Shown here: in pieces, positions 2,011-57,769 of the stretch
How the letters are laid out: each line of letters opens with the position of its first letter
Position numbering within the stretch: the first letter of the stretch is position 1
DNA from: Macrostomum lignano
Lineage: Eukaryota
Direction of reading: 5' to 3'
DNA length: 64,000 bases
Assembly (NCBI GenBank): GCA_002269645.1
Contig: NIVC01002567.1
Coordinates: forward strand, 97,187 to 161,186
Notes under the pieces: model-generated
What the model was told of the DNA's origin: nothing
Database searches by the model: none
The model's input: only the letters and a program-made list of their open reading frames with translations
Made by a program: the position numbers and the translations under genes

Positions 2011-2484
2011 ACTCAGGCTTAGTCCTTCTAGCAATGCTCTATTGTGCTTAAAATACTCGTAGTGGACTCTCAGTTAAGAGTCTAGCAGCACTATTTGCTA
2101 TGTCCATCACTGCCAGTTTGTCAGTATTTGTCTGCCAGTCTATTTGTTCGCCTGTGCCTACTGAAGCATTAGTAGTACTCTCATATGTGAGGCATTTTTT
2201 ATCGTAAAATCCACCAGTTAATTTTGCAGCAATAGAAAGTATTCTAAATTAGAATATTAGTTTGCTGATTGCGAAGTATCCTGTTCTGCTCTACCATGTC
2301 CTCAGTAATGCATATTCTTGTCACTCATAGCGCAGTCATTTTGATTTGAAATAAACATCTTCGCATCGATATTATCTGCTTGTCTTTAGCAAAAAAATTT
2401 GACTGATTAAACAATTTTCAACATGTAAGCAAGAATTGACTTACTGATATATATATTATAGTAGACGGGAGAACCTTGCCATAT

Positions 2485-4190
2485 CCTCTGTTGCTGAGCC
2501 AGTCTCCCAGATCCTCAATTGGGCAGCCAGTCTCCCAGATCCTCAGTTGGGCAGCCAGTCTCCCAGATCCTCAGTTGGGCAGCCAGTCTCCCAGATCCTC
2601 AGTTGGGCAGCCAGTCTCCCAGATCCTCAGTTGGGCAGCCAGTCTCCCAGATCCTCAGTTGGGCAGCCAGTCTCCCAGATCCTCAGTTGCTGGACCAGTC
2701 TCCCAGATCCTCAGTTGGGCAGCCAGCCTCCCAGATCCTCAGTTGCTGGGCCAGCCTCCCAGAACCTCAGTTGCTGGGCCAGCCTCCCAGATCCTCAGTT
2801 GCTGGGCCAGCCTCCCAGAACCTCAGTTGCTGTGCCAGCCTCCCAGATCCTCAGTTGCTGGGCCAGCCTCCCAGATCCTCAGTTGCTGGGCCAGTCTCCC
2901 AGATCCTCAGTTGCTGGACCAGTCTCCCAGATCCTCAGTTGCTGGGCCAGCCTCCCAGATCCTCAGTTGCTGGACCAGTCTCCCAGATCCTCAGTTGGGC
3001 AGCCAGTCTCCCAGATCCTCAGTTGCTGGACCAGTCTCCCAGATCCTCAGTTGGGCAGCCAGCCTCCCAGATCCTCAGTTGCTGGGCCAGCCTCCCAGAT
3101 CCTCAGTTGCTGGGCCAGCCTCCCAGAACCTCAGTTGCTGGGCCAACCTCCCAGATCCTCAGTTGCTGGGCCTGGGTCAGTCTCCCAGATCCTCAGTTAC
3201 TCGGCCAGCCTCCCAGATCCTCAGTTGCTCCTCCCAGAGTCAGTTGCTGGGCCAGCCTCCCAGATCCTCGGTTGCTAGGCCAGCCTCCCAGAGTCATCTG
3301 CTGGTCCAGCCTCCCAGAGTCAGCTGCTGGTCCAGCCTCTCAGAGTCAGTTGCTGGGCCAGTATCCCAGATCTCGGTTGCTGGGCCAGCCTCCCAGAGTC
3401 ATCTGCTGGTCCAGCCTCCCAGAGTCATCTGCTGGGCCAGCCTCCCAGATCCTCAGTTGCTGGACCAGTCTCCCAGATCCTCAGTTGGGCAGCCAGTCTC
3501 CCAGATCCTCAGTTGCTGGACCAGTCTCCCAGATCCTCAGTTGGGCAGCCAGCCTCCCAGATCCTCAGTTGCTGGGCCAGCCTCCCAGATCCTCAGTTGC
3601 TGGGCCAGCCTCCCAGAACCTCAGTTGCTGGGCCAACCTCCCAGATCCTCAGTTGCTGGGCCTGGGTCAGTCTCCCAGATCCTCAGTTACTCGGCCAGCC
3701 TCCCAGATCCTCAGTTGCTCCTCCCAGAGTCAGTTGCTGGGCCAGCCTCCCAGATCCTCGGTTGCTAGGCCAGCCTCCCAGAGTCATCTGCTGGTCCAGC
3801 CTCCCAGAGTCAGCTGCTGGTCCAGCCTCTCAGAGTCAGTTGCTGGGCCAGTATCCCAGATCTCGGTTGCTGGGCCAGCCTCCCAGAGTCATCTGCTGGT
3901 CCAGCCTCCCAGAGTCATCTGCTGGTCCAGCCTCCCAGAGTCAGCTGCTGGGCCAGTATCCCAGATCTCGGTTGCTGGGCCAGCCTCCCAGAGTCATCTG
4001 CTGGTCCAGCCTCCCAGAGTCATCTGCTGGTCCAGCCTCCCAGAGTCATCTGCTGGTCCAGCCTCCCAGAGTCAGCTGCTGGTCCAGCCTCCCAGAGTCA
4101 GCTGCTGGTCCAGCCTCCCAGAGTCAGTTGCTGGGCCAGCCTCCCAGAGTCAGCTGCTAGTCCAGCCTCCCAGAGTCAGTTGCTGGCCAC
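2485..4190. repeat. Compound 28-bp-family minisatellite
   Basis: Units such as cccagatcctcagttgggcagccagtct and cccagatcctcagttgctgggccagcct grade into cccagagtcagctgctggtccagcct. Accounts for the long ORFs at 2476-4288. Confidence 0.93.
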
Positions 4191-13951: not shown

Positions 13952-13962
13952 CTATCTATCTA

Positions 13963-13997
<35 letters not shown>

Positions 13998-14082
13998 GTC
14001 TATCTATCTATCTATCTGTCTATCTATCTATCTATCTGTCTATCTATCTATCTATCTATCTATCTGTCTATCTATCTATCTG

Positions 14083-14141
<59 letters not shown>

Positions 14142-14177
14142 GTCTATCTATCTATCTATCTATCTATCTGTCTATCC

Positions 14178-14233
<56 letters not shown>

Positions 14234-14234
14234 G

Positions 14235-14285
<51 letters not shown>

Positions 14286-14326
14286 GTCTATCCATCTATC
14301 TGTCTATCTATCTATCTATCTATCTG

Positions 14327-14365
<39 letters not shown>

Positions 14366-14401
14366 GTCTATCTATCTATCTATCTATCTATCTGTCTATC
14401 C

Positions 14402-14449
<48 letters not shown>

Positions 14450-14450
14450 G

Positions 14451-14481
<31 letters not shown>

Positions 14482-14489
14482 GTCTATCC

Positions 14490-14533
<44 letters not shown>

Positions 14534-14558
14534 GTCTATTTGTCTATCTATCTATCTG

Positions 14559-14597
<39 letters not shown>

Positions 14598-14598
14598 C

Positions 14599-14629
<31 letters not shown>

Positions 14630-14637
14630 GTCTATCC

Positions 14638-14674
<37 letters not shown>

Positions 14675-15416: not shown

Positions 15417-15980
15417 TCACACCCGCTGGAAGGCCAGCTGGCCTGTGCTTCTCTCGATATAGTCCAGCTCCCGCTTCATCTGGCACAGAGCGCAGGGCAG
15501 CGAGCAGCTGCTCGTTACGCAGCAGTCGTCGATGGCTCCGCCCGAGATGCCGTGGGCGGCGCGCAGTTTGGTGCGGTAGACCAGAGGCGCTGAGTGGCCG
15601 CACAGCGACAGGCAGAACGGGGCGCAGCAGCTCTCGCCCATTCTCGGCGACAGGCTGCAGCACAAGAAGCAGGGGGTGCACCAGGTGACCAGGCAGCAGG
15701 AGCTCATGTCCTCGCAGCAGCCGCAGAGACTCGTCGACCAGGTGCGCAGCTGGCGCGGCTGGTTAGTCACCACGTTGCCCAGGTTGACCATCACGTGGGT
15801 GCCGCCGCCACTGCCGCCACTTCTGTCCATGTTGACTGACGGCTGGTTGTAACCCACTCGGTAGGGATCCATGCCGGATGCCGTTGGCTGCTGCTGAGTC
15901 ACCCAGTGCTGCTGCTGCTGCTGCTGGTCCTCGTCTTGGTCATACTTTGGCGGCGGAGCGGTCGGTTCGTAGCGAGCCAT
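15417..15980 (-). CDS. PLAC8/cornifelin-family Cys-rich protein, paralogue A (187 aa)
   Basis: WSTSLCGCCEDMSSCCLVTWCTPCFLC...GESCC...YRTKLRAAHGISGGAIDDCCV...CALCQMKREL is the canonical PLAC8 domain. The N-terminus is Q/P-rich. Confidence 0.92.
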   Translation of the reverse strand: MARYEPTAPPPKYDQDEDQQQQQQHWVTQQQPTASGMDPYRVGYNQPSVNMDRSGGSGGGTHVMVNLGNVVTNQPRQLRTWSTSLCGCCEDMSSCCLVTWCTPCFLCCSLSPRMGESCCAPFCLSLCGHSAPLVYRTKLRAAHGISGGAIDDCCVTSSCSLPCALCQMKRELDYIERSTGQLAFQRV

Positions 15981-16034
15981 GCTGCTTTCGGAGCTGCTGG
16001 GGCCGGGCGCGAAAAGGGGGACAGTGCTTTAACT

Positions 16035-16500
16035 GCGTGTCTTGGTGCGTCTGTCTGTCTTGGTGCGTCTGTCTGTCTTGGTGCGTCTGTCTGTCTGTCT
16101 TGGTGCGTCTGTCTGACTGTCTTGGTGCGTCTGTCTGACTGTCTTGGTGCGTCTGTCTGACTGTCTTGGTGTGCCTGTCTGTCTGTCTTGGTGCGTCTGT
16201 CTGTCTGTCTTGGTGCGACTGTCTGTCTGTCTTGGTGCGACTGTCTGTCTGTCTTGGTGCGTCTGTCTGTCTTGGTGCGTCTGTCTGACTGTCTTGGTGC
16301 GTCTGTCTGACTGTCTTGGTGTGCCTGTCTGTCTGTCTTGGTGTGTCTGTCTGTCTTGGTGTGTCTGTCTGTCTGTCTTGGTGCGACTGTCAGTCTGTCT
16401 TGGTGTGTCTGTCAGTCTGTCTTGGTGTGTCTGTCAGTCTGTCTTGGTGTGTCTGTCTGTCTTAGTGTGCCTGTCTTAGTGTCTCTGACTCTGCCTGTCT
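16035..16500. repeat. TCTG/tcttggtgcg compound repeat
   Basis: gtctgtctgtcttggtgc-type units. Confidence 0.9.
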
Positions 16501-17985
16501 TGTTGTCTGTCTGCACTTGCCTAATAATTGTTGAATAAGTGAATACTAGACACAATCGAGAAGGAAATCCTACACAAACTTAAAAGGTGTCCGAGATCCA
16601 GGCAGGATTCACTGACTCACTTTGCTGCGGTTCAATAATCAGTTCAGTTAAGTTCAGTTCGGACCAGTTGTGCATTTTAATAGCTTCTTCAAACATTTAT
16701 TCTAATTCGCAACAATCTCTATACTTTAGCTAACATGTATAGCAGTCTAGGACTCTGGCTCTGCAGTTTTTGTGAATTCGAATTTCCAAGAAATACGAGT
16801 GTTTCCAAGAAATGCGAATGCACACTGACTGACTAAGAGGTAACTGCAGTGTAGACACAAACAATTACAGATATGATATCTATCGAATGAATCAATGCCG
16901 TTGGCTCAAGGCTGACGTTGGCTATAGTATTATAATCATACGGTGTTTATAACGGCATGCCTTAGTTTTACGACCTGAGATAACAGAAACAGAAAATATA
17001 AGATGAATTAGTTTTTAAATAGTTTTTTCTTGAAAGTCCAAGTCCAGGTCTCTCTATATCGCCTATAGGAGTAGATCATATGCGAAAAGAGAGGATTACA
17101 AAAATGAAGAGATCACATCACATCTTACCTTCTTTGACTTTAGTTTATAACTTTAACTTGGCTTGACTGGTGGAACAAGTCCGGTAGCTAAATTTCCTGG
17201 AAATTGTGCTGGCTTGGCAGTCATTCCCCCTCAAGTTCCTCCAATATAAAGGCTGGTTCTCCGTCGTTCGCAAATGTACATACTCCCCACCCCACCCCCG
17301 CCCCAAATAAAGATAAGTGAGGGCCGCCAATGTACATTGCAAATGCCCACGGACAAAGGCGGGCCCCGTTTTTTAAAGTTTTAATGTTACTAATAAACTT
17401 TTATATACGAGCGTACTTATTATAGCTTGTTTTCTTGGCTGAAGTATATTATATTATAAAATAAATTAGAATAAGATGTCTGCGTAAGTTGTAGGGGAAG
17501 GTTTCACAAACCCGAATTTTCGCAATGTTGAAAGTTGTCTATAAACTTGGTCTGGCCACGTTAAAGCGAGCGTTAAATTGTCAACCCCAGCCTGTATATG
17601 GACATTCAATGTTATCCTGCCGAGTGCGTTACTGTGGGCCATAGAGAGTGTGTGAATGCGGTTGCGGCCATAGACAAAAAGAGTAACTATGTTTTATCAT
17701 AGAACTTAAACATAGAGACTGAATATATTATGACTGGAGGTAGTGTACGAGCTATACGACAATAACAAACCAAGCAATATAGAAAAAGAGTAATAGCACA
17801 ATTGCGGCAGTGTGCGTAGCATAATTAATTCCCTTTAAAGATTATATAGATATAGATAATGAACCTGTAGTACTTATAAAAATGGCTGGCTGAAAGGCTA
17901 TTGGCTATATTTTAAGGCTTATCACAATTCCCAAATAGTGCGCGACATACCCTAGATAGATAGCAACCCTTCGCTTCAACCTGCA

Positions 17986-18900
17986 TAGGGATTCCAAAAT
18001 CCCGACATTTTACAATCCCGGGATTGAATAGTCCCGAAATCCCGATGCTGTTGAAATCCCGGGATTCAAAATCCCGGAATCCCGGTGCTTTTGCAATCCC
18101 GGGATTAAAAATCCCGGGATTCGATTCCCAAAAAAATCCCGGGATTCAAATCCCGGATTTTTGGCCCCAATCCCGGGATCCCGGGATCCCGGGATTGGAA
18201 TCCTAAGACGGACTGTGCGGCGTGCCGCGTGCAGTAGTCATGGTCTCGCGACTCTCAGAGTCTCAGGGCCTTTTCATATTACCAATTCCAGAACCAGAAT
18301 CGGTTCGGAATTCCAAGAAAAACAGCAGTATAACTATTAAACTCTGTTAATATTTGACTGCCTTAACAGCCTCACTTTGCACGATTTTTCACTTTCTTCT
18401 TGGCGACTGTCATTCAATGATAAAAACTTTATAGCACGTATCTCCCTCTAGTTATGGAGACAAAAAGTTTATACTTCACAAATTGGTTCTGGTTCTGGAA
18501 CCAGAACAAGCACTATGAAAAGGCCCTCAGTCTCGTCTCGTGGTGGAAAACGAAAAAAAGTTAAAATTATCTATCATTTACAGTTCACATTAACAATTTT
18601 TAGCTCAATTAGGACAGGAGCTTTGCAAAATGTTTAACGTTTCATTGAGAAACAGCAAAAACAAATAAATGTTTTATTATTCAAATAAACGTTTAGACTT
18701 TAAATTATCTAACTTAGGCATTGAAAGGTTGTTCTAATCCCGGACCAATCCCGGGATTAAGGCCTTGAAACCCCGGGATCCCGATCCCGGACTTTTGCAA
18801 TCCCGGGATTAGAAATCCCGGGATTCGATTCCCAAAAAAATCCCGGGATTCAAATCCCGGATTTTTGGCCCCAATCCCGGGATCCCGGGATTGGAATCCC
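17986..18900. mobile_element. Non-autonomous hAT-like element with ATCCCGGGAT palindrome arrays at both ends
   Basis: Left end TAGGGATTCCAA and right end TTGGAATCCC. The 8-bp direct repeat AACCTGCA flanks it at 17978-17985 and 18901-18908. An extra right-TIR copy (TTGGAATCCTA) ends at 18205. Confidence 0.65.
18266..18526. mobile_element. PIF/Harbinger-type MITE (261 bp) nested in the hAT-like element
   Basis: Perfect 13-bp TIRs GGGCCTTTTCATA and TATGAAAAGGCCC, with a 3-bp TSD TCA on both sides (18263-18265, 18527-18529). Confidence 0.82.
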
Positions 18901-19479
18901 AACCTGCAACCTTGTCCAACCAACCAGCCAACGAACTAGTAGCTACTGCTAATATTAAAACCAACACTATACTACTAGTCTAATAAACGCTAGGAATATG
19001 TTATAACAATGGGTGTAAACAATAAGAAAGAGGGAGAGAACGAGCGACGATGCACAAACAGCACAACAACGCGCGCAATATGAGGCGCAGATTCATTGTA
19101 ATTATGAGATGAAAATATTGAAAAATATTGGGGCCTATATATAAAGGAGAGATGAGAAAGTTACAACAAAAAGAGCATTATCTAGATTTCACAATTACCA
19201 ATTAATTAGTTATGTTAATAGCTACTTATTAATTAATTAATTTACCTCAAGAAACGCTCTAATTTTGCGACGTAAATCTTGTCTTAATTTTCTTTTGTGT
19301 AGTGTATAAAAACTCCAATTTTTTCTTTTCGTCTGTGATCTGGTCCCACATATTGTGACTTAAAAATGAGCCCCCATTTTGTGCTAGCTCTGTTCTGTAT
19401 ACATAGAGCGTTTCAATAGGTTCAATTTTATAATAATATTTTTATCGTTTATGGTCAAAGTTATCAATCAATTAAGTTC

Positions 19480-21020
19480 TTACTGATGTCGAGCTGATGT
19501 CGAGCAACAAAAACCTCGACGATCTAGATGATGGCGATGGGGACATCTGCTCGATGCAGCTGGATGCCATGATTGTTGCCTGCCGACGCCGCCGCTTCTG
19601 ATCCGCATAGGTTGTCGCCTGCGAAAGCGAAAGAAACGTCGACGCTGCACCGCTTTCATCTGGCCTGTCAACAACAATAGCGAGCTGCTGATCATCGACG
19701 GCGGCGGCGGCGGCGGCGGCAGCGGCGGCTTCATCCTCCGCCGAGATAGACTTTTGTGGCAGCGGCCTTCGACGACGTCTACTACCGGAAGGTGGCTGCT
19801 GACGATGCTCAGATTGCTTTTTTTGTTGTTGTTGTTGTTGTTGTTGTTGTTTTTGTTGTCTAGATATAGAACTGGCTTCAGCAGCAGCATCAGCGGCGCC
19901 GCGGCGGCGGTACGTCCAGCCACCAGAGCAGCAATCGTCGCCTGCATATTGGTCTTATTGGACAACATAGAGTCCGTGGCATAATGCCTAAACAGCATGG
20001 CCTCCGACGTCTCCATCAGGCTGGCTAGTGATCTTGTCAGCACAGGATGACTGGCGGTCAAGATGGTCGTTTTGGAGCTGCGGAACACTGTCGGCCCTAC
20101 GCCTCTGCGATTTAACAGGCGGGCAGCGTGCGATTCCACCGCGTGGCTGTATGTGCTGACTGACATCTTCTTGCCAGCACGCGTACAAAATACAAACGGA
20201 GATGCGGCGGCGGCAGCGGCGAATGCAGACGAAGAAGCAGCGGCTGTCAGCGAATAGCGCCATGACCGCAGCAACTCAAAGAATGCAGTTGGCACGATTG
20301 TCCATCCGGTAGACACTGTCGGGTTGAATGTAATCCCAGCGCAGTCCAATCCATGGCCGAATGCGTTGCGGATGCTGCATAGTCGCATGCATGACCAATC
20401 TGTTGCGCCCGCTGCTGTTGCTGCTTGGCGCGAGCAGATCAACGCAGTCAGCTAGGACAATGCGCCATTCGCCATCAGTTAGCCGCTTCTTGCGCTTTTT
20501 AGCGTGATGCTCCGGTGCGTCGAGCTTGTAGCGAAAGTCGTGCGTCTGACGCAGTGTGCGCATTCGTTTCGAAAACATGGCGCACCGCTCGCTCAGCACG
20601 ACAGTCAGCTCGATCGGCAGCTGCATCCAACCGCCCATGTAGTGGCGATGTTTGCCGGGATCATACTCGACGAACATTTCAATAAATTTCATGCACTTTA
20701 TCAGCGCCTCGGAACGGTTGCGCACAGTCCCGCTGCTCGTACTGGTGCGCGACAGCTCGGCGGCAGCCTCCGACGGCTCGGCCAGACAATACTCAAAGTC
20801 GCGCCGATGGTGAAGCTGACGCGCTCGAGAGATGTTGGCCTGCAGGTTGTCAGCGTCGAGATCGACAGCGGCCGCCGCCACAGTTTCAGCATATGCCACC
20901 GACGCAATTTTGTCAAACAGGAACACTAACAGGCGCAGCAGGGCGTCCAGCGCATCGCAGTAGCCGTCAATATCGGGATCACGGATGCCGGTGGATGGGT
21001 ACCAGTAAAGATACTCTATC
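19480..21020 (-). pseudogene. Tyrosine recombinase (phage-integrase fold), split by a frameshift/deletion near 20300
   Basis: ORF 20276-20926 has SSGTVRNRSEALIKCMKF (core-binding-like), KRLTDGEWRIVL and box I RNRLVMHATMQHPQRIRPWIGLRWDYI (cf. RDRAIL.LL..TGLR.SEL..LRW.DI). ORF 19480-20442 has IVPTAFFELLRSW...PFVFCTRAGKKMS, box II GPTVFRSSKTT and LASLMETSEAMLFRHY (putative catalytic Tyr at 19981-19983). Confidence 0.78.
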
Positions 21021-21485
21021 GCCTGTTGTCGCCGCAGTAAGCCGACAGCACGGGGGATGCCCGTTTGACTCGGGGAAGCGGCGGCGGCGGCGGCGGCGGC
21101 AGCGGGATAGCGGATAATGCAGGCGTAGCCGCCGCCAAAGCCGAAGGCGCAGGTGGAGCCGCTGACTGAGGCGCAGGTGGAGCCAATGATGAAGCTGCTG
21201 CCAGCGCAGGCCGAGCCGCCTCCGGTGCCATGTCCTCAACAGCCGCTGCCGCCGGTGTGCCAGTCGACAATAACAGACGGGCATGCTTCTTGGCGTGCTT
21301 CGCAGCATCCCTGTACCACATAGCACGCTCCGCGAAATATTTCTCGGCGCGATCAGAGCGCGTCGCGGCCGCTTCTTCGGCTGGGCGAAGGATCAGGCGC
21401 CGCCAGTGCCACGTCGTCGCCAGGGGTTAGCGAAATGGGCGGCAACGCCTCCTCGCTGTTTCCGGACGCACGGAGCCCCCTGCAG

Positions 21486-21731
21486 CTAAGTCAAGTCAAA
21501 GAAGTGCCACGTCGTTCGCTGCAGCGGCGTCCAGGTGGCCACACTACTCGCCACCGTGCCTGCAGATGAATTAATTGATGCATCCTGGCACCAGACGGCA
21601 TGCTTGGCGAAAAAGTGCCGCTTTAGAGTGTCGACTCGAGGCGTCGCGTAATTACAACCTTCGATTGGACAGGGCCTGGCCGTCGGCTTAGCAGATTTCT
21701 GCTGCTTCGGAACCGTGCTGACCGACGCCAC
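21486..21731 (-). CDS. Short C2H2 zinc-finger ORF (GTG start), possibly the decayed N-terminus of the recombinase gene
   Basis: CPIEGCNYATPRVDTLKRHFFAKH has C-x4-C-x12-H-x4-H spacing. Confidence 0.55.
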   Translation of the reverse strand: MASVSTVPKQQKSAKPTARPCPIEGCNYATPRVDTLKRHFFAKHAVWCQDASINSSAGTVASSVATWTPLQRTTWHFFDLT

Positions 21732-21829
21732 CGCAGAGATGCCTGAGCACGCGTGAGAGAGATATATATTGCGCTCTTATACAGCGAATAATAATTAAAA
21801 GCGTGACCATAAACAAAACAAAAATTTCA

Positions 21830-22677
21830 AGACAGATATAACGCACCAGGAACGGCACATGGCCCGCATATATGATACTGCCGACCCATTTGCTCTGCAC
21901 ATGGGCCTTGTGCTTTGCGTTTATGACAAATCTATCCCTATTCATGAGCAGCAGAAGCTGCCCCTTGCCGCCTGTGCCGGCTGCAGTTCATCAAAGAATA
22001 GGCACTGTGTATGCCTAATTTTAATCCGTCGAACGGAAAGGCTTCGGAGAGTCTGGCGCGTAGACAGTCTCTCGGCCGAAATGTAAGCCGACCATCGCCG
22101 ACTTGCCCACTCCACTGGGGCCCCACAAAAAAATTATTGTTGGAACAGCCAGTCCTTGTCGCATGGCTGTGCAAATTTCACGCTGTATTGCACAGGCGCC
22201 ACCAAGCGACAGTCTCTGTGTGTCGTTGTTGCTACGCGACGCCGCATTTGATGTTGTCGTCGACGCCACGACAGCTGGAAATTGGCAGACGCCGCACATG
22301 CTTGGCCGTACCAGATTGGCCGGCATGGGGCTGATGCCTAGCTCCTCCACCCGGATGCGGCGCATCATTTGGACAGAGCTGAAATAGTCCAGCGTCTGTC
22401 TAAGCAACAACGGATGGCCGCACACTAGCTGCGGATCGTCGGGCCTCGGCTGCATGCAGCCCAAAGGGTGGGACATGGCCCACCGATACAACAACACATT
22501 CCTGGACAGGCAGCCGTCGTCAATGTCCGTGACGGCTGCTGTCGGGTCGTTAAGTGTCACGCGGCGTATCTCCGCGTGTGCACTCTGTACACTCCCGATC
22601 TCAGCATTTGTCCACCCTTTAGCGGCGAACGCGTCCTCCCTGGGCCCCGACGCAAACAGCCTATCAGATCTACTGTG
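21830..22677 (-). pseudogene. Superfamily 3 helicase resembling the C-terminus of CRESS-DNA virus Rep, frameshifted
   Basis: Walker A IIFLWGPSGVGKS (22099-22122) is followed, across three successive frame changes, by PFDGLKLGIH, Walker B CLFFDEL (21984-22001) and LLLLMNRDRFVINAKHKAHVQSKWVGSIIYAGH. This parallels the Rep pattern WFDGY / VFDDF / LL.L.DRYP..V..KG / I.ITSN. Confidence 0.68.
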
Positions 22678-22679
22678 CT

Positions 22680-23244
22680 ATGTAGAAATTGCACAACACT
22701 GAACTTTCTCAAACCTGAAATTAACGTCCACAGGGGACATAAGAAGGACTGGAAACTGTCCCCTATCGAAAATTCGACAATCGCTATCGGCGATGAAAGT
22801 CTCTCTGAGCCCGGGCAAGCGCACCCAGATGTACAAATTGAGATTTTTCCAAATCTACGCGCTGAGAACTTAATCAAGGTGCTGCGTGAGCAGTTGAAGA
22901 ACCCTAGCTCAGCTGTCAAAGTGGTCATTCTCTTCCCTTGTGGTCATGACCTGTCGAGACAATTTGAAGGTTTCCAATTTCCAACAACAATCGTGAATCA
23001 TTGTCGCAAGGCCTTTCCAGAGACAAACATCTACACACTTGACTCAGTGGTGGATGTCGAGGCAACGGACAGCGTCCGAAGCAACGTGGACAAATTGAAC
23101 CGCCATGCGCGGAATCTCAACCAGCAGGGGCACGTGTCACTACCCAGACAGGGTTTGACCTTCCTGTCAGACAAGGTTACACTATCTGACCAATCGGCCT
23201 TGGAGGTCTTCAGGATTGTCTATGGCAAAGTGCAAAAAGACTAG
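22680..23244 (+). pseudogene. SGNH-hydrolase-like upstream ORF of the Penelope-like element
   Basis: HRGHKKDWKLS...TIAIGDESL...DVQIEIFPNLRAENL...VKVVILFPCGHD resembles the IIGDSNL...QIDSFPGA...KVILS.G.N pattern of retroelement SGNH domains. Confidence 0.6.
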
Positions 23245-23256
23245 TAGGTTTTAGGA

Positions 23257-24840
23257 ATGCGGCCAGCAGCCAAGTCAAATTTATCAAATTATCGTCTCTC
23301 TGAATGCAAAACCGAAATTTTAGGAATGGGGAAGAACTTTGTGCCAGCCCCAATTATTATGGGGTCCAGCGTCCTTTCTGACTCCATCAAGGTTTTCAAG
23401 CAGAGAATAGTGCTTAACTTCCTGCTTCAGCGTCGCACGTGTGCTTTCACCCCGCGCACCCCTTTTACTGGCCGAGCTTCAATCCCCAACATCAACTTGG
23501 ACAAGTGGCGCTCTCACAGAGACCTTTTTGAAAGCCTAGACAAGATCAGAATTCCAAGAATCATACACAACAAGCCAAACCTTCAGGAGCAGCAGAGAAT
23601 GGCACTGAAGATTCTTCGAGACAAAAGCAGTATCGTCATTAAACCTGCCGACAAGGGCAGCAATATGGTCGTTATGAATCGAACTGATTACATACTGGAA
23701 GCTAACAGACAGCTCTCCAACAGGACCTTCTACCAACCCCTAGACACTGCAATGAGCGCCCAGACCAGTGCCATTATCAAAGCCATTTTTCAAGATCTTA
23801 AAGAAGAAAAGATAATTACTAATCATCAATACTCGCAACTGATTCCACCGTCTATTCCTAGAGATCGAATTTTTTTACCTCTTGCCAAAAATTCACAAGG
23901 ATCCCGAAGAATGGCCTACTCCTGGAGTGCCTCCTGGGAGACCCATTGTCTCAGTCTGCAGCTCGGAAAGCTACATGAGCGCCAAATTTATCGATCTCTT
24001 TCTACAGCCGATCGCTATGGAATAAGACTCCTTCATCCGAGACACGGACCACTTTCAAGCGGCTATCAATGATTTGATTTTTGAAAAAGACGAAAATGTA
24101 TTTCTGGTTACAATGGATGTTGAATCCCTGTACACCAATATACCCACTGATAAGGGGATGGATGCCATTAGAGATGCCTTTCAAAAATTTCCCCAAACCT
24201 CAAGGACAGATAATCATCTTCTTGCGCTCCTGGATATTAACTTGAACAAAAATGATTTTGTTTTTAACGACACGCGCTATCTTCAAGTCAAAGGCACAAG
24301 CATGGGAAAGTCATTTGCGCCATCCTACGCCACCATCTTTATGTCTGCCTGGCAATCCAAAGCTTTAGAAGCTGCTCCGTTTACCCCTCGTTCTTCAAGC
24401 GCTACATTGACGAAATTTTTATGGTTTTCGTCGGCACTGAAGTCGAACTAAAGGAGATGCACAGGCATCTGAATGAGTTCGATAGCAACACCCGACTCAA
24501 GATGCAATACAGCAGAGAAAAGGTTCACTTCCTGGACTGTTGTGTCAGTCTGGCTGACGGAGGGAGGCAACAGCAACAAGAGACTTTCGTGCTCAATCTA
24601 CTTCAAACCCACCGATTCACGCCAGCTCTTACATCCGGGATCTTTTCACTCAAAGCACACATTCAAAGGTATACTGAAATCTCAGTTCCTCCGTTACGCT
24701 CGCCGTTGCACATTTAAAGAAGACTTCGATGAGGCCAGCAGCAGCTTAACAAGCATCCTGAAGAATCAAGGATATTCTGTCCGCTTAATCAGGGATGCCA
24801 AGAAATCTGCTCTCATCCAGCTAGGCTTCTACATTGATGG
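23257..24840 (+). pseudogene. Penelope-type reverse transcriptase (disrupted)
   Basis: NLSNYRLSECKTEILGMGKNFVP; IVIKPADKGSNMVVMNRTDYILEANRQLS; (FY)LLPKIHK...PPGRPIVS; LVTMDVESLYTNIP; YLQVKGTSMGKSFAPSYATIFM; RYIDE at 24400-24414 instead of YIDD; VHFLD; YFKPTD. Confidence 0.92.
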
Positions 24841-24843
24841 TCG

Positions 24844-25290
24844 GTGGGAGTTCGGCTTCCAGGATTGTGGCAATCTAAGCTGCCGTCCTTGCAGAGAGCA
24901 CGGGCCTTTGGCCAAGTTTGTTTAGGGTCCAGCGCTACAAATATGATTTACAAAATTTGTCAAAAAGTCCGCAGGAATGTGGTGTATGCCATTCTGTGCA
25001 AGACTTGCAATGACCGCTGTATCTACGTAGGTGAGACTGGAGGCGCTCTTAAAGTCAGACTTCAGGCTCACCTGAGCGACATCAGACTGGCTAAGGACAC
25101 CCCAATCTCCAGGCACTTTCGGTCACCAAACCACAATATTCAGGACCTCCGCTTTATGGGTCTGTGGTACCTCAGTACTGAGTGCCTGGCCACTAAAGAG
25201 GGCGCTCAACGCAGGCGGAGGAATATGGAGCAGAAGCTCATCGCTTTACTATAGACTCAGACTCCAGCAGGCATAAACACCGTCATCACT
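24844..25290 (+). pseudogene. GIY-YIG endonuclease of the Penelope-like element
   Basis: C..C..C knuckle (CGNLSCRPC), NVVYAILCKTC...IYVGETG...RLQAHLSDI...PISRHF...E.KLIALL*TQTPAGIN. Confidence 0.9.
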
Positions 25291-26245
25291 GAAAAAAGAC
25301 GCCTGCATCCCAATAGTGATCCCTTTCACGGACCACTCTGGGCGAGTTGTTCATCAAATTCGCACGTCCATTTCAAACCACGCTGCAGAGCTGGACACGG
25401 CGGCCGTCTATTCTCGCTCACGCTCATTAAAGGACATTCTATGTCCATCCAATCTGCCCGCCGTAACTAATGGTCGATCCCAAAACTCAAACCTCTTTTC
25501 AGATGAGCACTAGATGTACAGGTGTACACATGCGTTGCAACGTGCCCGCCTAACCATATTGATCATTTTTTTACACGTGGTTTTTGTACTCACTGTTGAA
25601 ATGAACAAGTCATGAGCTGAGAGTTTGCGAGACAAGACGAAAGTGCCAAGTGCACCGACAACCAACGATACGATTTATTACAAGCGAGGGTCAATAGTAG
25701 CCACCCCCACCCCAGGGCTAAAACACCAACAATGTACATTAAAATCACGATAGAGCAGAGACGTGCAAAGAGCGTGAGCCACGGACCATGAGTACACGCA
25801 CAGAGTTAAGAACACAAACAATACACGGAGTAAAAGCGCACCCCAACCCCACGCACCAGGCCCAACACTCACTATAAATAGTGAGTTAAATTTATAATTT
25901 ACTAATTTACTAATTTACAAATTTTACTTAAAGTTAAAGGTGAATCGGAATATCTGATAATGAAAAACTCAAGGCAGGCAGATAGGGCGATCCCGCAGAG
26001 AAAATGAGTAATCAATGTCTTGTTTTCCTATGGAGTATTAAATATATACAGAGCTAATAATGAAAAATTAATCGACCATTTTTAGCGAGAAAACGTTTGC
26101 TGATTAAGCATTTGAAAAATTGGTTTTGATTAAAAGATCCTACTAAAAGTAGAGCGAATGGCATGGACAGATAAAGTATCAGAAATTCAATCAATAACTC
26201 GTCGATAAGCGAGACCCGATCCCGAAATTTTCCGAAGGCTCTCCT

Positions 26246-26776
26246 TCAACGGTGCCGCGCGAACGCCGGCTTTCCGGTGGTTTGCTCGATGAAGTCCAGC
26301 TCCCGCTTCATCTGGCACACGGAGCAGGCCATACAGCAGCCGGTGGTCACGCAGCAGTCCTCGATGGCGCCGCCTCGGATGCCGTGGGCGGCTCGCAGTT
26401 TGGTGCGGTAGACCAGCGAAGCCGACTGACCGGACAGCGACAGGCAGAACGGAGCGCAGCAGCTCTCGCCGAACCTGTGCGACAGGCAGCAGCACATGTA
26501 GCAGGGGCAGCACCAGTACACCAGGCAGCAGGATTCGAAGTCGTCAAAACAGCCGCAGACGCTTGACGACCAGTTGCGCAGTCCATCGGCAGATTGGCCT
26601 ACGTACAGCTGCTGGGAGACGACCGTCATTTGGTAACCGGCACTCCCTGCTGACTGCTCATAACCAACCCTGTAGGGGTCGCTGCCGGCTCCCGGCATCG
26701 GCTGCTGCTGCTGCACCTGCTGTGGCTGCTTCTGGATAACTCCATCTTCCTGCGGCGGCTGGGCGGCTTCGGCCAT
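26246..26776 (-). CDS. PLAC8/cornifelin-family protein, paralogue B
   Basis: ATG at 26776 (MAEAAQPPQ). WSSSVCGCFDDFESCCLVYWCCPCYMCCCLSHRFGESCC...YRTKLRAAHGIRGGAIEDCC...CQMKREL. Confidence 0.92.
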   Translation of the reverse strand: MAEAAQPPQEDGVIQKQPQQVQQQQPMPGAGSDPYRVGYEQSAGSAGYQMTVVSQQLYVGQSADGLRNWSSSVCGCFDDFESCCLVYWCCPCYMCCCLSHRFGESCCAPFCLSLSGQSASLVYRTKLRAAHGIRGGAIEDCCVTTGCCMACSVCQMKRELDFIEQTTGKPAFARHR

Positions 26777-36823: not shown

Positions 36824-37720
<897 letters not shown>

Positions 37721-42698: not shown

Positions 42699-43378
<680 letters not shown>

Positions 43379-45344
43379 ACGGATATTGTTCAAGATCAAG
43401 CCCCTTAGACTCTTGGGTCTTGTCCCTCTACCTCCAGGTCTTGAGAGTTAATGTGCCATTTTAGCTCGTACTGACACTGAGAGCTGGCATCTCCTGGGAG
43501 GTTGGGATCGGCGAATCAAACCATGATTGACCACCAGGCGAGCTGCTCTATCGCTTTTGTCTGGCAAGGTAGAATTTTCAGAGGTTCAGCCAAATTCAAT
43601 GGGAGATAGAAATGGGTCGAGAAATAAGCAAGCAGTTTTATAACCCATTCAATCGAAAGTAATTATCTAATTTATTCCATTTGTCCCACAAGTGGTTTAG
43701 CCTCCACTTCTTGGTTAAATGGCCCTCACAATTCTGACTGAATGAAGCAGCATATTGTCGAACGTCGTTATAATAATTCCGGAAAGAAAAATTAAAATCT
43801 CAAGCTCTACGCAGTTTTTTTTATTTCAAGCCTGATTTTACCATTTGCGGCTGACTGCACACCTTCGCAGCTGATTAGTGGCCCACAGTTAATTAGCCTG
43901 CAGACTGCCCGACATAGCCTGAATGATTGCAGACTCTTAAATACGCTCAAAGAAGACTTAAGAACGGAGCAGCTCTGCAATCAGCGTCTCCTGGCGGATA
44001 CGTTTTAATTATCTTGGTGTAATGTAATCCGACGTCTACATGGTCAGATTTTCAGTTGCTGTGCTCAGCTCTCCTGCTGTTAGCTGGATTAAAGCTCAGC
44101 AATTAATCAGGGTGAGTAAGCCGGCTCTGACTAATGGGGTCAGAACTGGAGTCTGGGATACCATCTCGATAACTCTGACTGCAGTTTTTTAGTTTACCCC
44201 AACAGAAAACTCGAAAATCTTGTCCTAGTTCGAGTTTTGATAATGCGCATTAGTTTTTATACTTTTCAAACTACAGACGTTAAAATGCTTTGATGCATGA
44301 ATTGTCGATTTTCAGTTTTCAAGTTGCTCTGACGTTTAGTGTAGCATTCCAAGTAATGTTGGTCCAAGTAAGTTTAAAAGCGTAAAATGACGTCGCGACA
44401 TTTTGTCGTTTTCTTCAGTTCATCTGCACTCGTCTCTGTTTACTCTGTTTTCTCATCCCTTTGTCCAGTTCAGTCTTGTTAGTCTTATCTCTCCTCCCTC
44501 GCTGCCTTCTGATTGGCTCTTCAATCTCGCCTCTTGCCTTAGTCGCGCACTTCACCCCTCCTCCTTATCTATCTTGCACTCCCCCCCCCCCTAGTTTATG
44601 ACATAATATACCCGCTTGGGCCTTGAGCCTCACTTCTATGTACAATTGACTATCTTATTTTTTACAAGATTGAACTGGGACAGAGGCGAGAGAAAACAGT
44701 AAACAGATGACGAGTGCAGATGAACTGAAGAAACGATTAAGAAAGCCGCGACAATGCGACAAGAGACTTTATCTTTGAATTTGTTTTGAGACTTTAGCTC
44801 TGAAATGCAGCAAGCTTGTAAAAACAGGTTCGAATAATCGGAAGGTGATGCAAAATTTGAAATGAAGATTTTCGCGGAAGAGTTGGCTGCACTTCAGATC
44901 CTGGTTCTAGACGTCCTTGGCTCACATTGACCAATCGCGGCAGAGCAGAGTTCGCAGTCCTGAGAAACACTATTTCTGCAGCAGTCGAACCATCCTCCCC
45001 AAAATTTCTTGTTAGATAAATTTTTCTTCTAGAAGAAGCCAGAAGAAATTCTCTCAGACATTCTCGAAGCCAAACTCAACATGATAGAGGCGCTGCAGCG
45101 ACTGTGAGTAATCCGTTGATTGAAGCGTGAAGTTCTACACAAGCCTCTAAAAGCAGACAGTCAGAAAAAACTTGTAATTATCAGAGTTGTCTCTGAGGAG
45201 ATTCGTGCTGGGCATTGCGGCTTAAGCTTGAGTTGGCGACTCACTTTAAATTTGGCCCAGGCAGAACTTTGGCGGCCAAACAATTAGTTTATTAAAAGAA
45301 GTGCTAAGAAACTATGCAAGCCTTCATTCATAAGCCTTACACTG

Positions 45345-55949: not shown

Positions 55950-57560
55950 CCATGTCTCTCACTGTCTCTCTATCTCTCACTGTCTCTCTATCTCTCACTG
56001 TCTCTCTATCTCTCACTGTCTCTCTTTCTATATCTCACTGTCTCTCCTTCTATCTCTCACTGTCTCTCCTTCTATATCTCACTGTCTCTCCTTCTATCTC
56101 TCACTGTCTCTCCTTCTATCTCTCACTGTCTCTCCTTCTATATCTCACTGTCTCTCCTTCTATCTCTCACTGTCTCTCTTCCTATCATTCTATGTCTCTC
56201 TTTCTATCTCTCACTGTCTCTCTTTCTATATCTCACTGTCTCTCCTTCTATCTCTCACTGTCTCTCCTTCTATCTCTCACTGTCTCTCCTTCTATCTCTC
56301 ACTGTCTCTCCTTCTATATCTCACTGTCTCTCCTTCTATCTCTCACTGTCTCTCCTTCTATCTCTCACTGTCTCTCTTTCTATATCTCACTGTCTCTCCT
56401 TCTATATCTCACTGTCTCTCCTTCTATATCTCACTGTCTCTCCTTCTATCTCTCACTGTCTCTCTTCCTATCATTCTATGTCTCTCTTTCTATCTCTCAC
56501 TGTCTCTCTTTCTATATCTCACTGTCTCTCCTTCTATCTCTCACTGTCTCTCCTTCTATCTCTCACTGTCTCTCCTTCTATCTCTCACTGTCTCTCCTTC
56601 TATATCTCACTGTCTCTCCTTCTATCTCTCACTGTCTCTCCTTCTATCTCTCACTGTCTCTCTTTCTATATCTCACTGTCTCTCCTTCTATATCTCACTG
56701 TCTCTCCTTCTATATCTCACTGTCTCTCCTTCTATCTCTCACTGTCTCTCTTCCTATCATTCTATGTCTCTCTTTCTATCTCTCACTGTCTCTCTTTCTA
56801 TATCTCACTGTCTCTCCTTCTATCTCTCACTGTCTCTCCTTCTATCTCTCACTGTCTCTCCTTCTATCTCTCACTGTCTCTCCTTCTATCTCTCACTGTC
56901 TCTCTTCCTATCATTCTATGTCTCTCTTTCTATCTCTCACTGCCTCTCTTCCTATCTTTCTCTGTCTCTCTTTCTATCTCTCACTGTCTCTCTATATCTC
57001 ACTGTCTCTCTATCTCTCACTGTCTCTCCTTCTATATCTCACTGTCTCTCTTTCTATCTCTCACTGTCTCTCTTTCTATCTCTCACTGTCTCTCTATATC
57101 TCACTGTCTCTCTTTCTATCTCTCACTGTCTCTCTATCTCTCACTGTCTCTCCTTCTATCTCTCACTGTCTCTCCTTCTATCTCTCACTGTCTCTCCTTC
57201 TATCTTTCTCTGTCTCTCTTTCTATCTCTCACTGTCTCTCTATATCTCACTGTCTCTCTTTCTATCTCTCACTGTCTCTCTATCTCTCACTGTCTCTCTT
57301 TCTATCTCTCACTGTCTCTCTATCTCACTGTCTATCTTTCTATCTCTCACTGGCTCTCTTCCTATCATTCTATGTCTCTCTTTCTATCTCTCACTGTCTC
57401 TCTTCCTATCTTTCTCTGTCTCTCTTTCTATCTCTCACTGTCTCTCCTTCTATATCTCACTGTCTCTCCTTCTATATCTCACTGTCTCTCCTTCTATATC
57501 TCACTGTCTCTCCTTCTATATCTCACTGTCTCTCTTCCTATCTTTCACCGTCTCTTTCAA
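55950..57560. repeat. CT-rich minisatellite (~24-bp unit)
   Basis: ctcactgtctctccttctatctct-type units. Confidence 0.95.
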
Positions 57561-57769
57561 TCTCTCACTTTTTCGTTTTTAATCTTTCTGATCGTTTGCT
57601 CTCAGTTTTTGTCTGTCGCTATTTTTTACTTTATGTGGTTCGTAATTTGTCAAACAGTTTATAGATAGATTCGCTTCATAGTGCATGCAATGCATGGATG
57701 CACCGGATAGTCGGCGCGTTCGCTGCAGTTTGGCCTCAACCGAGGGGGCCTCAAATATGGATAAGGTTG

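What the first reader, a model, noticed from the sequence alone, without database searches (positions are those of the whole stretch)
19480..22677. Relic of a possible integrative DNA virus or transposon: CRESS-like SF3 helicase + C2H2 zinc finger + tyrosine recombinase in one orientation
Seen: three co-oriented minus-strand coding blocks with no intron-type minisatellites between them, unlike the host genes here. They are an SF3 helicase (GPSGVGKS / FFDEL / INAKH...IIYAGH), a C2H2 finger and a near-full tyrosine recombinase (box I QHPQRIRPWIGLRWDYI; C-terminal LASLMETSEAMLFRHY). Established: Cryptons encode only a YR. DIRS elements pair YR with RT/RNase H. Eukaryotic CRESS viruses carry Rep and capsid but no integrase. 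Rep/helicase plus YR pairings are typical of prokaryotic integrative elements and some Polinton-like/MELD-type viruses. Inference: this could be a decayed copy of an uncatalogued eukaryotic family that replicates with a Rep-like helicase and integrates with a YR. The Penelope insertion at ~22680 removed or displaced its upstream part.
Basis: partly seen in the sequence, partly recalled or inferred. Interest (0 to 1): 0.9.

Follow-up and report, generated by a model that had tools for sequence, protein, structure and literature searches.

The report
Decayed tyrosine-recombinase element relic in flatworm
A 3.2-kb GC-rich, protein-coding-looking block in the flatworm Macrostomum lignano carries a degenerate tyrosine-recombinase domain, most likely from an old mobile element, but the claimed virus-type "SF3 helicase" next to it is supported only by a generic ATP-binding loop.

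Summary
The window comes from Macrostomum lignano (assembly Mlig_3_7). On the minus strand, 19480-22677 is a real coding-like block. Its stop-free stretches are longer than in any of 1000 shuffles. It holds a Walker A/B pair, one C2H2 finger and a low-complexity linker.

The tyrosine-recombinase (YR) call holds, but only under a purpose-built test. Pfam, NCBIfam, PHROGs, PDB sequences, 1.8 billion protein representatives and AlphaFold all gave nothing. When the two open stretches are kept separate and aligned in order to a catalytic-domain profile of 18 YRs, they score z about 6. That compares with 0.2 when reversed, at most 2.9 for 254 decoys, and 8.9-25 for true YRs. Arg I, Arg II and Tyr are kept. 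Both His positions and the Lys are lost.

The "CRESS-like SF3 helicase" call does not hold. Only the P-loop matches real CRESS Reps. The part after Walker A (z 1.8, the same as controls) and the HUH part (p 0.4) do not match.

No second copy, termini or homologue could be found, so linkage of the parts and a "new family" remain untested.

Best reading: an inactive relic of a YR-encoding (Crypton-like) element lying against a Penelope-like retroelement. Interest is modest.

The parts
19480..22677 (-). Whole GC-rich coding-like block: a chain of overlapping open frames on one strand. There is no gene call here in the Mlig_3_7 annotation.
   Evidence: Composition; ORF-length test against 1000 shuffles; no called gene across window 15980-25980; no tandem repeats inside.
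21850..22677 (-). P-loop NTPase-like coding region of unknown family. The gene is broken by two frameshifts. Its upstream end abuts the Penelope-like element.
   Evidence: Only generic P-loop hits (AAA_16, RsgA, AFG1; E 0.02-0.06). PDB gives generic hits only. No homologue among 5.8 billion clusters. AlphaFold pLDDT 33.6.
22099..22122 (-). Walker A motif GPSGVGKS, preceded by a hydrophobic strand and Trp.
   Evidence: Read directly. The window-derived pattern W-G-P-[ST]-G-V-G-K-[ST] hits 77 IMG/VR loci, 45 of them on contigs of at most 4.2 kb, most of which carry CRESS-type Rep ORFs.
21983..21997 (-). Walker B-like FFDEL, about 37 codons after the Walker A lysine.
   Evidence: Read directly. 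The spacing resembles that in the fished CRESS Reps, but there is no profile support.
21743..21846 (-). AT-rich spacer between the P-loop region and the finger region. It begins with GT and ends with AG. An intron is possible but the reading phase does not fit as the sequence stands.
   Evidence: Read directly; unverified inference.
21600..21671 (-). Single C2H2 zinc finger, CPIEGCNYATPRVDTLKRHFFAKH.
   Evidence: Pattern Cx4Cx12Hx4H read directly. Weak Pfam match to C2H2_ASCIZ (E 0.039). Only 2 such patterns occur in all six frames of the 64-kb window.
21017..21485 (-). Ala/Pro-rich low-complexity stretch between the finger and the YR-like gene body. It contains a possible ATG start for the downstream gene.
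   Evidence: Translations; (GCC)n-type runs.
19480..21016 (-). YR-like gene body. It holds an N-terminal part without detectable similarity, the catalytic-domain-like part and a low-complexity tail. The gene is broken: one frameshift inside the catalytic-domain-like part and at least one more frame change towards the linker.
19948..20506 (-). Tyrosine-recombinase catalytic-domain-like span. Arg I, Arg II and the Tyr nucleophile are kept. Both His positions are Thr and the Lys position is not kept. A KKRKKR nuclear-localisation-like patch sits just upstream.
   Evidence: Collinear two-stretch profile test: z 6.0-6.6. Controls: reversed 0.18, swapped -0.41, 254 decoys at most 2.9, left-out true YRs 8.9-25. 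Traceback.
22690..25500 (+). Neighbour: Penelope-like retroelement (RT plus GIY-YIG), head-to-head with the block. Its reading frame is broken into at least five pieces. Bounds are approximate.
   Evidence: Pfam RVT_1 E 0.0055 and GIY-YIG E 2.4e-4; translations.
18000..18970 (.). Neighbour: two clusters of palindromic AATCCCGGGATT units. They include a 137-nt direct repeat (90.5% identical, with a 100-nt core at 99%) and flank a core of about 0.6 kb that has its own inverted repeat. Probably an unrelated foldback or MITE-like repeat.
   Evidence: (DNA fold z -15). No partner copy elsewhere in the window.

Best explanation
The block is an inactive remnant of a eukaryotic mobile DNA element that encoded a tyrosine recombinase. 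The closest known kind is a Crypton-type DNA transposon. It sits in the transposon-rich spacer between two tandem PLAC8 genes of Macrostomum lignano.

Shown:
- The minus strand was protein-coding until recently.
- Its 3' half carries a YR catalytic-domain homologue with Arg-Arg-Tyr kept and His/His/Lys lost.
- The reading frames are broken: two frameshifts in the P-loop region, one frame change or intron before the finger, and at least two in the YR-like gene.
- No gene is called here.

Inferred by analogy with Cryptons (PMC3212892): the ancestral element moved by YR-catalysed excision and site-specific re-insertion. The KKRKKR patch and the C2H2 finger would serve nuclear import and DNA binding.

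The upstream P-loop region is either an accessory NTPase of the same element or the N-terminal part of one long protein. Its family is unknown, and it is not demonstrably an SF3 helicase. As the copy stands it cannot be catalytically competent.
For: Coding-like block and source:
- ORF-length excess against shuffles.
- Source organism and lack of a gene call.

YR homology:
- z 6.0-6.6, with 0 of 300 and 0 of 100 shuffles reaching the observed score.
- Stable over gap costs and stretch bounds (3.75-6.6).
- Holds with two disjoint halves of the comparator set (5.7 and 4.75), and with each stretch alone (4.4 and 4.7).
- Controls: reversed 0.18; order swapped -0.41; 12 + 170 real proteins at most 2.9; 72 windows from elsewhere in this window at most 2.2; true YRs left out of the profile 8.9 (Cre) to 25.
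- R148/R247/Y279 equivalents aligned to R/R/Y.
- A weak in-register HMM patch at the same place (p 0.003-0.0065).

No RT, capsid or other family on the same strand. Penelope-like neighbour. Cryptons lack terminal repeats and can carry extra proteins (PMC3212892).
Against: - No curated model or database search recognises a YR here: Pfam/NCBIfam/PHROGs, PDB, 1.84 billion representatives, 50,697 phage records.
- With the 18-sequence HMM the upstream stretch loses its local signal.
- The supporting test is my own, and its stretch bounds were chosen after looking at the sequence.
- All comparators are bacterial or phage YRs. No Crypton, DIRS or Ngaro sequence could be compared.
- Only one copy is visible, and no termini or target duplication are defined.
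- GC3 (0.62-0.67) and trinucleotide runs look host-like.
- The frameshifts could be long-read assembly errors.
- Animal Cryptons had not been reported from flatworms in PMC3212892.
Confidence: 0.5

Rival explanations
1. One reading: one integrative element (transposon or small DNA virus) that replicates with a Rep-like SF3 helicase and integrates with a YR. It would be an uncatalogued eukaryotic family, truncated at its 5' side by the Penelope insertion.
For: - Co-orientation and an almost gap-free chain of open frames from the P-loop to the YR.
- The exact Walker A nonamer, with either Ser replaceable by Thr, is found mostly in CRESS-type Reps in IMG/VR.
- The Walker A-B spacing of about 37 residues is like those Reps.
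- The open frame runs right up to the Penelope border.
- The YR part is real.
Against: - A model of the 105 residues after Walker A in 32 CRESS Reps gives -0.4 and -0.9 bits for the two downstream stretches, ranks 104 and 166 of 724.
- The collinear three-stretch test gives z 1.8, no better than reversed (1.5) or permuted (1.4).
- The frameshift-aware DNA test gives z 1.8.
- The HUH part scores -2.2 bits, p 0.4.
- P-loop flanks add only p 0.04.
- No SF3 family appears in Pfam/PHROGs.
- No capsid or other virus genes lie in the flanks.
- No second locus is available to show linkage.
Confidence: 0.15
2. A host gene or its pseudogene: a lineage-specific nuclear protein with a P-loop, a C2H2 finger and a domesticated, catalytically dead YR-derived domain. 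This would be comparable to the Crypton-derived DUF3504 domain of WOC/ZMYM proteins. The apparent frameshifts would be assembly errors or recent pseudogenisation.
For: - Catalytic His/His/Lys are lost while the fold-level similarity is kept. DUF3504 likewise lacks most of the catalytic tetrad (PMC3212892).
- GC content and GC3 are closer to host exons than to the Penelope copy.
- Poly-Ala/Pro/Asn runs resemble those of host proteins in this window.
- There is an NLS-like patch.
- Frameshifts occur without any need for in-frame stops.
Against: - No gene is called here in a transcriptome-guided annotation.
- There is no DUF3504 hit.
- No paralogue or orthologue was found in 5.8 billion clusters for two stretches or in 1.84 billion representatives for a third.
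- There are several frame breaks.
- The position, in a spacer full of repeats, is typical of junk insertions.
Confidence: 0.22
3. The YR resemblance is an artefact of my test. The block would be an orphan open-reading-frame cluster, or a decayed unknown gene, unrelated to any recombinase.
For: All standard tools are negative. The DNA-level variant of the test gives z 3.6-4.4 for unrelated coding DNA and tandem repeats, which shows how such tests can mislead.
Against: The protein-level test is controlled by reversal, order swap, 254 real-sequence decoys and independent halves of the comparator set. All of these separate cleanly from the observed value. Three catalytic residues fall on their columns without being imposed.
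Confidence: 0.13

Closest known systems
Crypton DNA transposons (Goodwin et al. 2003; Kojima and Jurka 2011, PMC3212892)
   Same: - A YR is the only recognisable recombination enzyme.
- No RT lies on the same strand.
- No terminal inverted or long direct repeats are visible.
- Size is a few kb.
- Extra coding capacity beside the YR is known in some Crypton groups (C48 peptidase, GCR1_C).
- Animal hosts.
   Different: - No Crypton sequence could be compared, so there is no phylogenetic placement.
- A P-loop/C2H2 N-terminal module is not described for Cryptons.
- Flatworms were not among the six animal phyla listed in 2011.
- Only one broken copy is visible, and termini are undefined.
DUF3504 domain of WOC/ZMYM/KCTD1/QRICH1 (domesticated Crypton YR)
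   Same: A YR-derived domain with an incomplete catalytic set, associated with zinc fingers in a nuclear protein.
   Different: - There is no Pfam DUF3504 match.
- Here R, R and Y are kept.
- The frames are broken and no gene model or orthologue was found.
- The finger is C2H2, not MYM type.
DIRS / Ngaro YR retrotransposons
   Same: Animal YR-encoding elements. In Ngaro the YR is the last ORF, followed by repeats.
   Different: - No RT/RNase H lies upstream on the same strand.
- No inverted terminal or split direct repeat partner was found in the window.
CRESS-DNA virus Rep (HUH endonuclease + SF3 helicase)
   Same: An identical Walker A nonamer context and a similar Walker A-B spacing.
   Different: No HUH domain signal, no motif B'/C signal and no family-model hit. 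CRESS viruses carry no YR.
Polinton-like viruses with YR and primase-SF3 helicase
   Same: The pairing of a YR with a P-loop replication-type protein in a eukaryotic integrating element. This is a resemblance at the level of gene content only.
   Different: - No capsid, penton, packaging ATPase or protease genes lie nearby.
- The block is 3.2 kb, against more than 14 kb for these viruses.
- The host is an animal.
- The helicase identity is unproven.

Membership tests
Tyrosine recombinase superfamily | Collinear similarity across the catalytic domain | tested here: met
   Two-stretch global profile test z 6.0-6.6. Controls at most 2.9. True YRs 8.9-25.
Tyrosine recombinase superfamily | Full catalytic set Arg-Lys-His-Arg-His/Trp-Tyr | tested here: not met
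   R, R and Y are on their columns. Both His columns hold Thr. The Lys column holds no Lys.
Tyrosine recombinase superfamily | Recognition by curated family models (for example Pfam Phage_integrase or DUF3504) | tested here: not met
   No hit at E up to 10 in Pfam or NCBIfam, nor at E up to 1 in PHROGs. hhalign probability below 2%.
Tyrosine recombinase superfamily | Catalytic-domain fold | tested here: inconclusive
   The single-sequence AlphaFold model has pLDDT 41.8. It is too poor for a fold search, so none was run.
Crypton | YR groups with Crypton YRs in a phylogeny | not testable with these tools
   No natural Crypton protein could be fetched.
Crypton | Multiple copies sharing termini, with short (4-6 bp) direct repeats or none | not testable with these tools
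   There is only one copy in the window. No eukaryotic genome collection is searchable. Exact-ORF look-ups were empty.
Crypton | No reverse transcriptase in the element | tested here: met
   No RT family appears on the minus-strand stretches. The only RT nearby is the Penelope-like one on the other strand.
DIRS / Ngaro | RT/RNase H co-oriented with the YR | tested here: not met
DIRS / Ngaro | Inverted terminal repeats or split direct repeats | tested here: not met
   No partner repeats around the block or for the 18.0-18.97 kb cluster. This holds within the 64-kb window only.
SF3 helicase / CRESS Rep | Walker A and closely spaced Walker B | tested here: met
   GPSGVGKS and FFDEL lie about 37 residues apart. 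The same nonamer occurs in CRESS-type Reps. This feature is shared with other P-loop NTPases.
SF3 helicase / CRESS Rep | Motifs B' and C (sensor-1 Asn) after Walker B | tested here: not met
   Post-Walker-A model: -0.4 and -0.9 bits. Collinear test z 1.8, equal to controls. Key conserved residues are not matched.
SF3 helicase / CRESS Rep | N-terminal HUH endonuclease domain | tested here: not met
   Model of the pre-Walker-A part of 32 Reps: -2.2 bits, with 798 of 2000 shuffles as good.
Polinton / Polinton-like virus | Capsid and morphogenesis genes next to the replication and integration genes | tested here: not met
   The flanks hold only AT-rich non-coding DNA, a palindromic repeat cluster, a Penelope-like element and host PLAC8 genes.
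C2H2 zinc finger | Cx2-4Cx12Hx3-5H with the conserved hydrophobic positions | tested here: inconclusive
   The pattern and the Leu position are present. The Pfam match is weak (E 0.039). Expectation by chance in the region is 0.135.
Penelope-like element (neighbour) | RT followed by a GIY-YIG endonuclease on one strand | tested here: met
   RVT_1 E 0.0055 and GIY-YIG E 2.4e-4, both below Pfam's own cut-offs but in the right order.

The most novel reading that the evidence does not exclude
The P-loop region, the C2H2 finger and the YR domain are parts of one protein or one element. On this reading they define an undescribed family of YR-mobilised DNA elements in flatworms with an N-terminal NTPase module. 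Other, better preserved copies would exist in Macrostomum genomes.
Probability: 0.2. Interest if true: 0.65.

Novelty: new member of a known kind. Interest (0 to 1): 0.3.

Why it matters
If the reading is right, this adds a very divergent YR remnant to the few YR-bearing DNA elements known from animals, in a phylum (flatworms) not listed for Cryptons in the 2011 survey. It also shows that such remnants escape all standard family models.

The more exciting claim is a helicase-plus-recombinase element bridging CRESS-like replicons and integrating transposons. That would matter for the origin of eukaryotic integrating DNA elements, but the present evidence does not carry it.

For genome annotation the practical lesson is modest. 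It is an unannotated, broken, single-locus relic between two PLAC8 genes.

Tried and rejected
Standard searches that gave nothing
- Pfam, NCBIfam and PHROGs on every open stretch gave only generic P-loop hits.
- The search for homologous proteins found nothing with the upstream stretch of the YR-like gene or with the P-loop stretch.
It was wasted.
- phmmer against 1.84 billion representatives returned one spurious repeat protein.
- PDB sequence searches gave nothing useful.
- tblastn against plasmids and phages gave nothing.
- AlphaFold on two stretches as they stand gave pLDDT 41.8 and 33.6, so no fold search was run.

Attempts to fetch comparators
- The search for related loci with the element stretch found nothing. 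With lambda Int it returned only identical copies.
- A window-derived eight-residue box I pattern in IMG/VR gave one unrelated hit.

Leads considered and dropped
- Local HMMs: six YRs gave weak in-register hits, and 18 YRs kept only one patch.
- My by-eye match of the N-terminal part to CRESS Rep motifs I-III was refuted.
- My by-eye match of the region after Walker B to motifs B'/C was not supported.
- The frameshift-aware profile-versus-DNA test was abandoned as evidence, because unrelated coding DNA and tandem repeats reach z 3.6-4.4.
- An intron between the P-loop and finger regions: GT..AG is present, but the phase does not fit.
- A Ngaro-type split direct repeat: no partner was found.
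- A 23-nt imperfect inverted match between the 3' flank and the AT-rich spacer (I12) was judged to be chance.
- Rfam and tRNA scans gave nothing real.
- Exact-ORF look-ups on other contigs were empty.

Self-report
- Scripts printed majority-rule lines of the comparator profiles as diagnostics. These covered fragments of environmental CRESS Rep proteins and bacterial/phage YRs. They are not repeated here.
- Earlier notes and script outputs name open stretches by their coordinates.
Full report
SOURCE AND SETTING

An exact look-up of a host ORF places the window on contig NIVC01002567.1 of GCA_002269645.1. That is the Mlig_3_7 assembly of the flatworm Macrostomum lignano (PMC10733133).

The window is full of minisatellites. 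It carries recognisable host genes: two tandem PLAC8 genes, a Ras-family/IFT27-like exon and a rhodopsin-type GPCR.

The finding lies in the 10-kb spacer between the two PLAC8 genes. No gene is on record for window 15980-25980 in that annotation.

IS THE OBSERVATION THERE?

Yes, as far as the strings and the strand go. 19480-22677 is a sharply bounded GC-rich block (0.575) without tandem arrays.

- **Coding look.** On the minus strand an almost uninterrupted chain of overlapping open frames runs through it. The three longest stop-free stretches sum to 860 codons. The maximum in 1000 dinucleotide-preserving shuffles was 767. The strand was therefore coding until recently.
- **Codon-position GC.** This is coding-like for the main stretch (0.61/0.43/0.67). 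It lies between host exons (GC3 0.69-0.85) and the Penelope copy (0.48).
- **Quoted motifs.** All are present. Taken singly, a Walker A or a C2H2 pattern is not rare: 0.23 and 0.135 are expected per shuffled region.
- **Breaks.** The genes are broken. There are two frameshifts in the P-loop region, one further frame change or an intron before the finger, and at least two frame changes in the YR-like gene, one of them inside the catalytic-domain-like span. No in-frame stop is needed to connect the stretches. Because Mlig_3_7 is a long-read assembly, some breaks could be assembly errors. I could not test this.

STANDARD TOOLS SAY NOTHING

- Pfam, NCBIfam and PHROGs give only generic P-loop matches (E 0.02-0.06) and a weak C2H2 match. 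They return no Phage_integrase, DUF3504, RT, Rep or SF3 family.
- Two word-indexed searches of 5.8 billion clusters found no relative. One exhaustive phmmer search of 1.84 billion representatives also found none, apart from a spurious repeat protein.
- PDB sequences, plasmids and phage genomes gave nothing.
- AlphaFold without an alignment gave unusable models (pLDDT 41.8 and 33.6).
- There is no second copy in the window.

TARGETED TEST OF THE YR CALL

I took natural YRs from annotated records:
- XerC, XerD, FimB and FimE of E. coli K-12.
- Lambda Int and P1 Cre.
- Twelve diverse phage integrases.

Local HMM searches gave only weak hits, though in register. With six YRs the two stretches ranked 2 and 4 of 1045 six-frame pieces, with shuffle p 0.0065 and 0.003. 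With 18 YRs only one 28-residue patch stayed (p 0.0045), while left-out true YRs scored 24-152 bits. hhalign gave P 0.03-0.06.

I then aligned the two open stretches to a position-specific profile of the catalytic domain. They were kept separate and never joined. The profile had to be used from end to end, with the first stretch on its left part and the second on its right part.

| Test | z |
|---|---|
| Two stretches, in order (0 of 300 and 0 of 100 shuffles as good) | 6.0-6.6 |
| Range over gap costs and stretch bounds | 3.75-6.6 |
| Six-sequence half of the comparator set alone | 5.7 |
| Twelve-sequence half of the comparator set alone | 4.75 |
| Each stretch alone | 4.4 and 4.7 |
| Control: same stretches reversed | 0.18 |
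| Control: order swapped | -0.41 |
| Control: 182 real-protein decoys, maximum | 2.9 |
| Control: 72 windows from long open stretches elsewhere in this window, tandem-repeat translations included, maximum | 2.2 |
| True YRs left out of the profile, Cre to the best | 8.9 to 25 |

The traceback puts R, R and Y on the Arg I, Arg II and Tyr columns. It puts Thr on both His columns and no Lys on the Lys column. The parts of the two stretches that are used do not overlap on the DNA. The N-terminal, core-binding part has no signal (z -0.27), which is usual for this poorly conserved part.

A frameshift-aware DNA version of the test also gave z 5.8. Unrelated coding DNA and repeats reach 3.6-4.4 in that version, so I do not count it.

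I conclude, with about 85% confidence, that a YR catalytic domain is really encoded here, with an incomplete catalytic set.

TARGETED TEST OF THE SF3 / CRESS-LIKE CALL

A degenerate DNA pattern taken from the window's own Walker A context (W-G-P-[ST]-G-V-G-K-[ST]) found 77 loci in IMG/VR. Of these, 45 lie on contigs of at most 4.2 kb, and most of those carry CRESS-type Rep ORFs. This gave natural comparators, and it shows that the P-loop variant is typical of such Reps.

A model of 32 of them matches the window only over the seeded P-loop: 22.8 bits by construction, with the flanks adding p 0.04.

| Test | Result |
|---|---|
| Model of the 105 residues after Walker A | -0.4 and -0.9 bits for the two downstream stretches; ranks 104 and 166 of 724 |
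| Collinear three-stretch test | z 1.8, against 1.5 reversed and 1.4 permuted |
| Model of the HUH part | -2.2 bits, p 0.4 |

What remains is a Walker A/B pair with SF3-like spacing of about 37 residues. This is compatible with an SF3 helicase but far from showing one. I commit only to "P-loop NTPase of unknown family".

SURROUNDINGS

- **Upstream, head-to-head.** A Penelope-like element lies here (RT then GIY-YIG), broken into at least five pieces. The minus-strand open frame of the block runs right up to its border. Truncation by that insertion is therefore plausible, but it is not shown. Beyond it (25.5-26.2 kb) nothing coding-like continues.
- **Downstream.** There is AT-rich DNA and then a cluster of palindromic AATCCCGGGATT units, with a 137-nt direct repeat around a 0.6-kb core. 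It has no partner elsewhere in the window, so there is no sign of Ngaro-type split repeats.
- **No virus genes.** No capsid or other virus genes lie in the flanks.

WHAT IT MOST LIKELY IS

- **Best reading (0.5).** A dead remnant of a YR-encoding DNA element of the Crypton kind. The ancestor would have moved by YR-mediated excision and site-specific insertion (by analogy, PMC3212892). It would have used a basic KKRKKR patch and a C2H2 finger for nuclear import and DNA binding. Its P-loop module would have an unknown role.
- **Rivals.** A host or domesticated gene with a dead YR-derived domain, like DUF3504 (0.22). An artefact of my test (0.13).

Linkage of the parts, copy number and termini cannot be addressed with the collections at hand, because none holds eukaryotic genomes.

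NOVELTY AND SCORE

YR-bearing elements are known in many animals, so a divergent relic is a new member of a known kind. The helicase-YR pairing would be new, but it is not supported. Interest is 0.3.

Noticed in passing
window 15417-15980 (-) and 26246-26776 (-): Two tandem, co-oriented, single-exon PLAC8-family genes flank the spacer that holds the block. Each was found by exact look-up only on this contig.
   Followed up: partly
window 22690-25500 (+): A Penelope-like retroelement copy (weak RVT_1 followed by GIY-YIG) with its frame broken into at least five pieces. Its GC content (about 0.46) matches the genomic background, unlike the neighbouring block.
   Followed up: partly
window 18000-18970: Two clusters of palindromic AATCCCGGGATT units. 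They include a 137-nt direct repeat (90.5% identical, with a 100-nt core at 99%) around a 0.6-kb core with its own 42-nt inverted repeat. The DNA fold z is -15. It gives only spurious sub-threshold Rfam hits. It may be a foldback or MITE-like repeat.
   Followed up: partly
window 20490-20510 (-): A basic patch, KKRKKR, lies just upstream of the YR catalytic-domain-like span. It looks like a monopartite nuclear localisation signal.
   Followed up: no
IMG/VR loci L101-L177: The nonamer W-G-P-[ST]-G-V-G-K-[ST] is strongly enriched in small (2-4 kb) CRESS-type Rep-bearing contigs. It also occurs in giant-virus RFC-like proteins, other AAA-type ATPases and one picorna-like polyprotein. The P-loop alone does not assign a family.
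   Followed up: yes
whole window, e.g. 2479-4186, 13952-14674, 36824-37720, 42700-43380, 55955-59260: There is an extreme load of micro- and minisatellite arrays (67 TRF rows with score at least 100). They generate many long spurious ORFs in several frames. ORF length alone is a poor guide to genes in this genome.
   Followed up: no
window 19435-19457 and 21804-21826: A 23-nt imperfect inverted match (83%) lies between the 3' flank of the block and the AT-rich spacer upstream of the finger. It would bracket the finger-plus-YR part. I judged it to be chance in AT-rich DNA.
   Followed up: no
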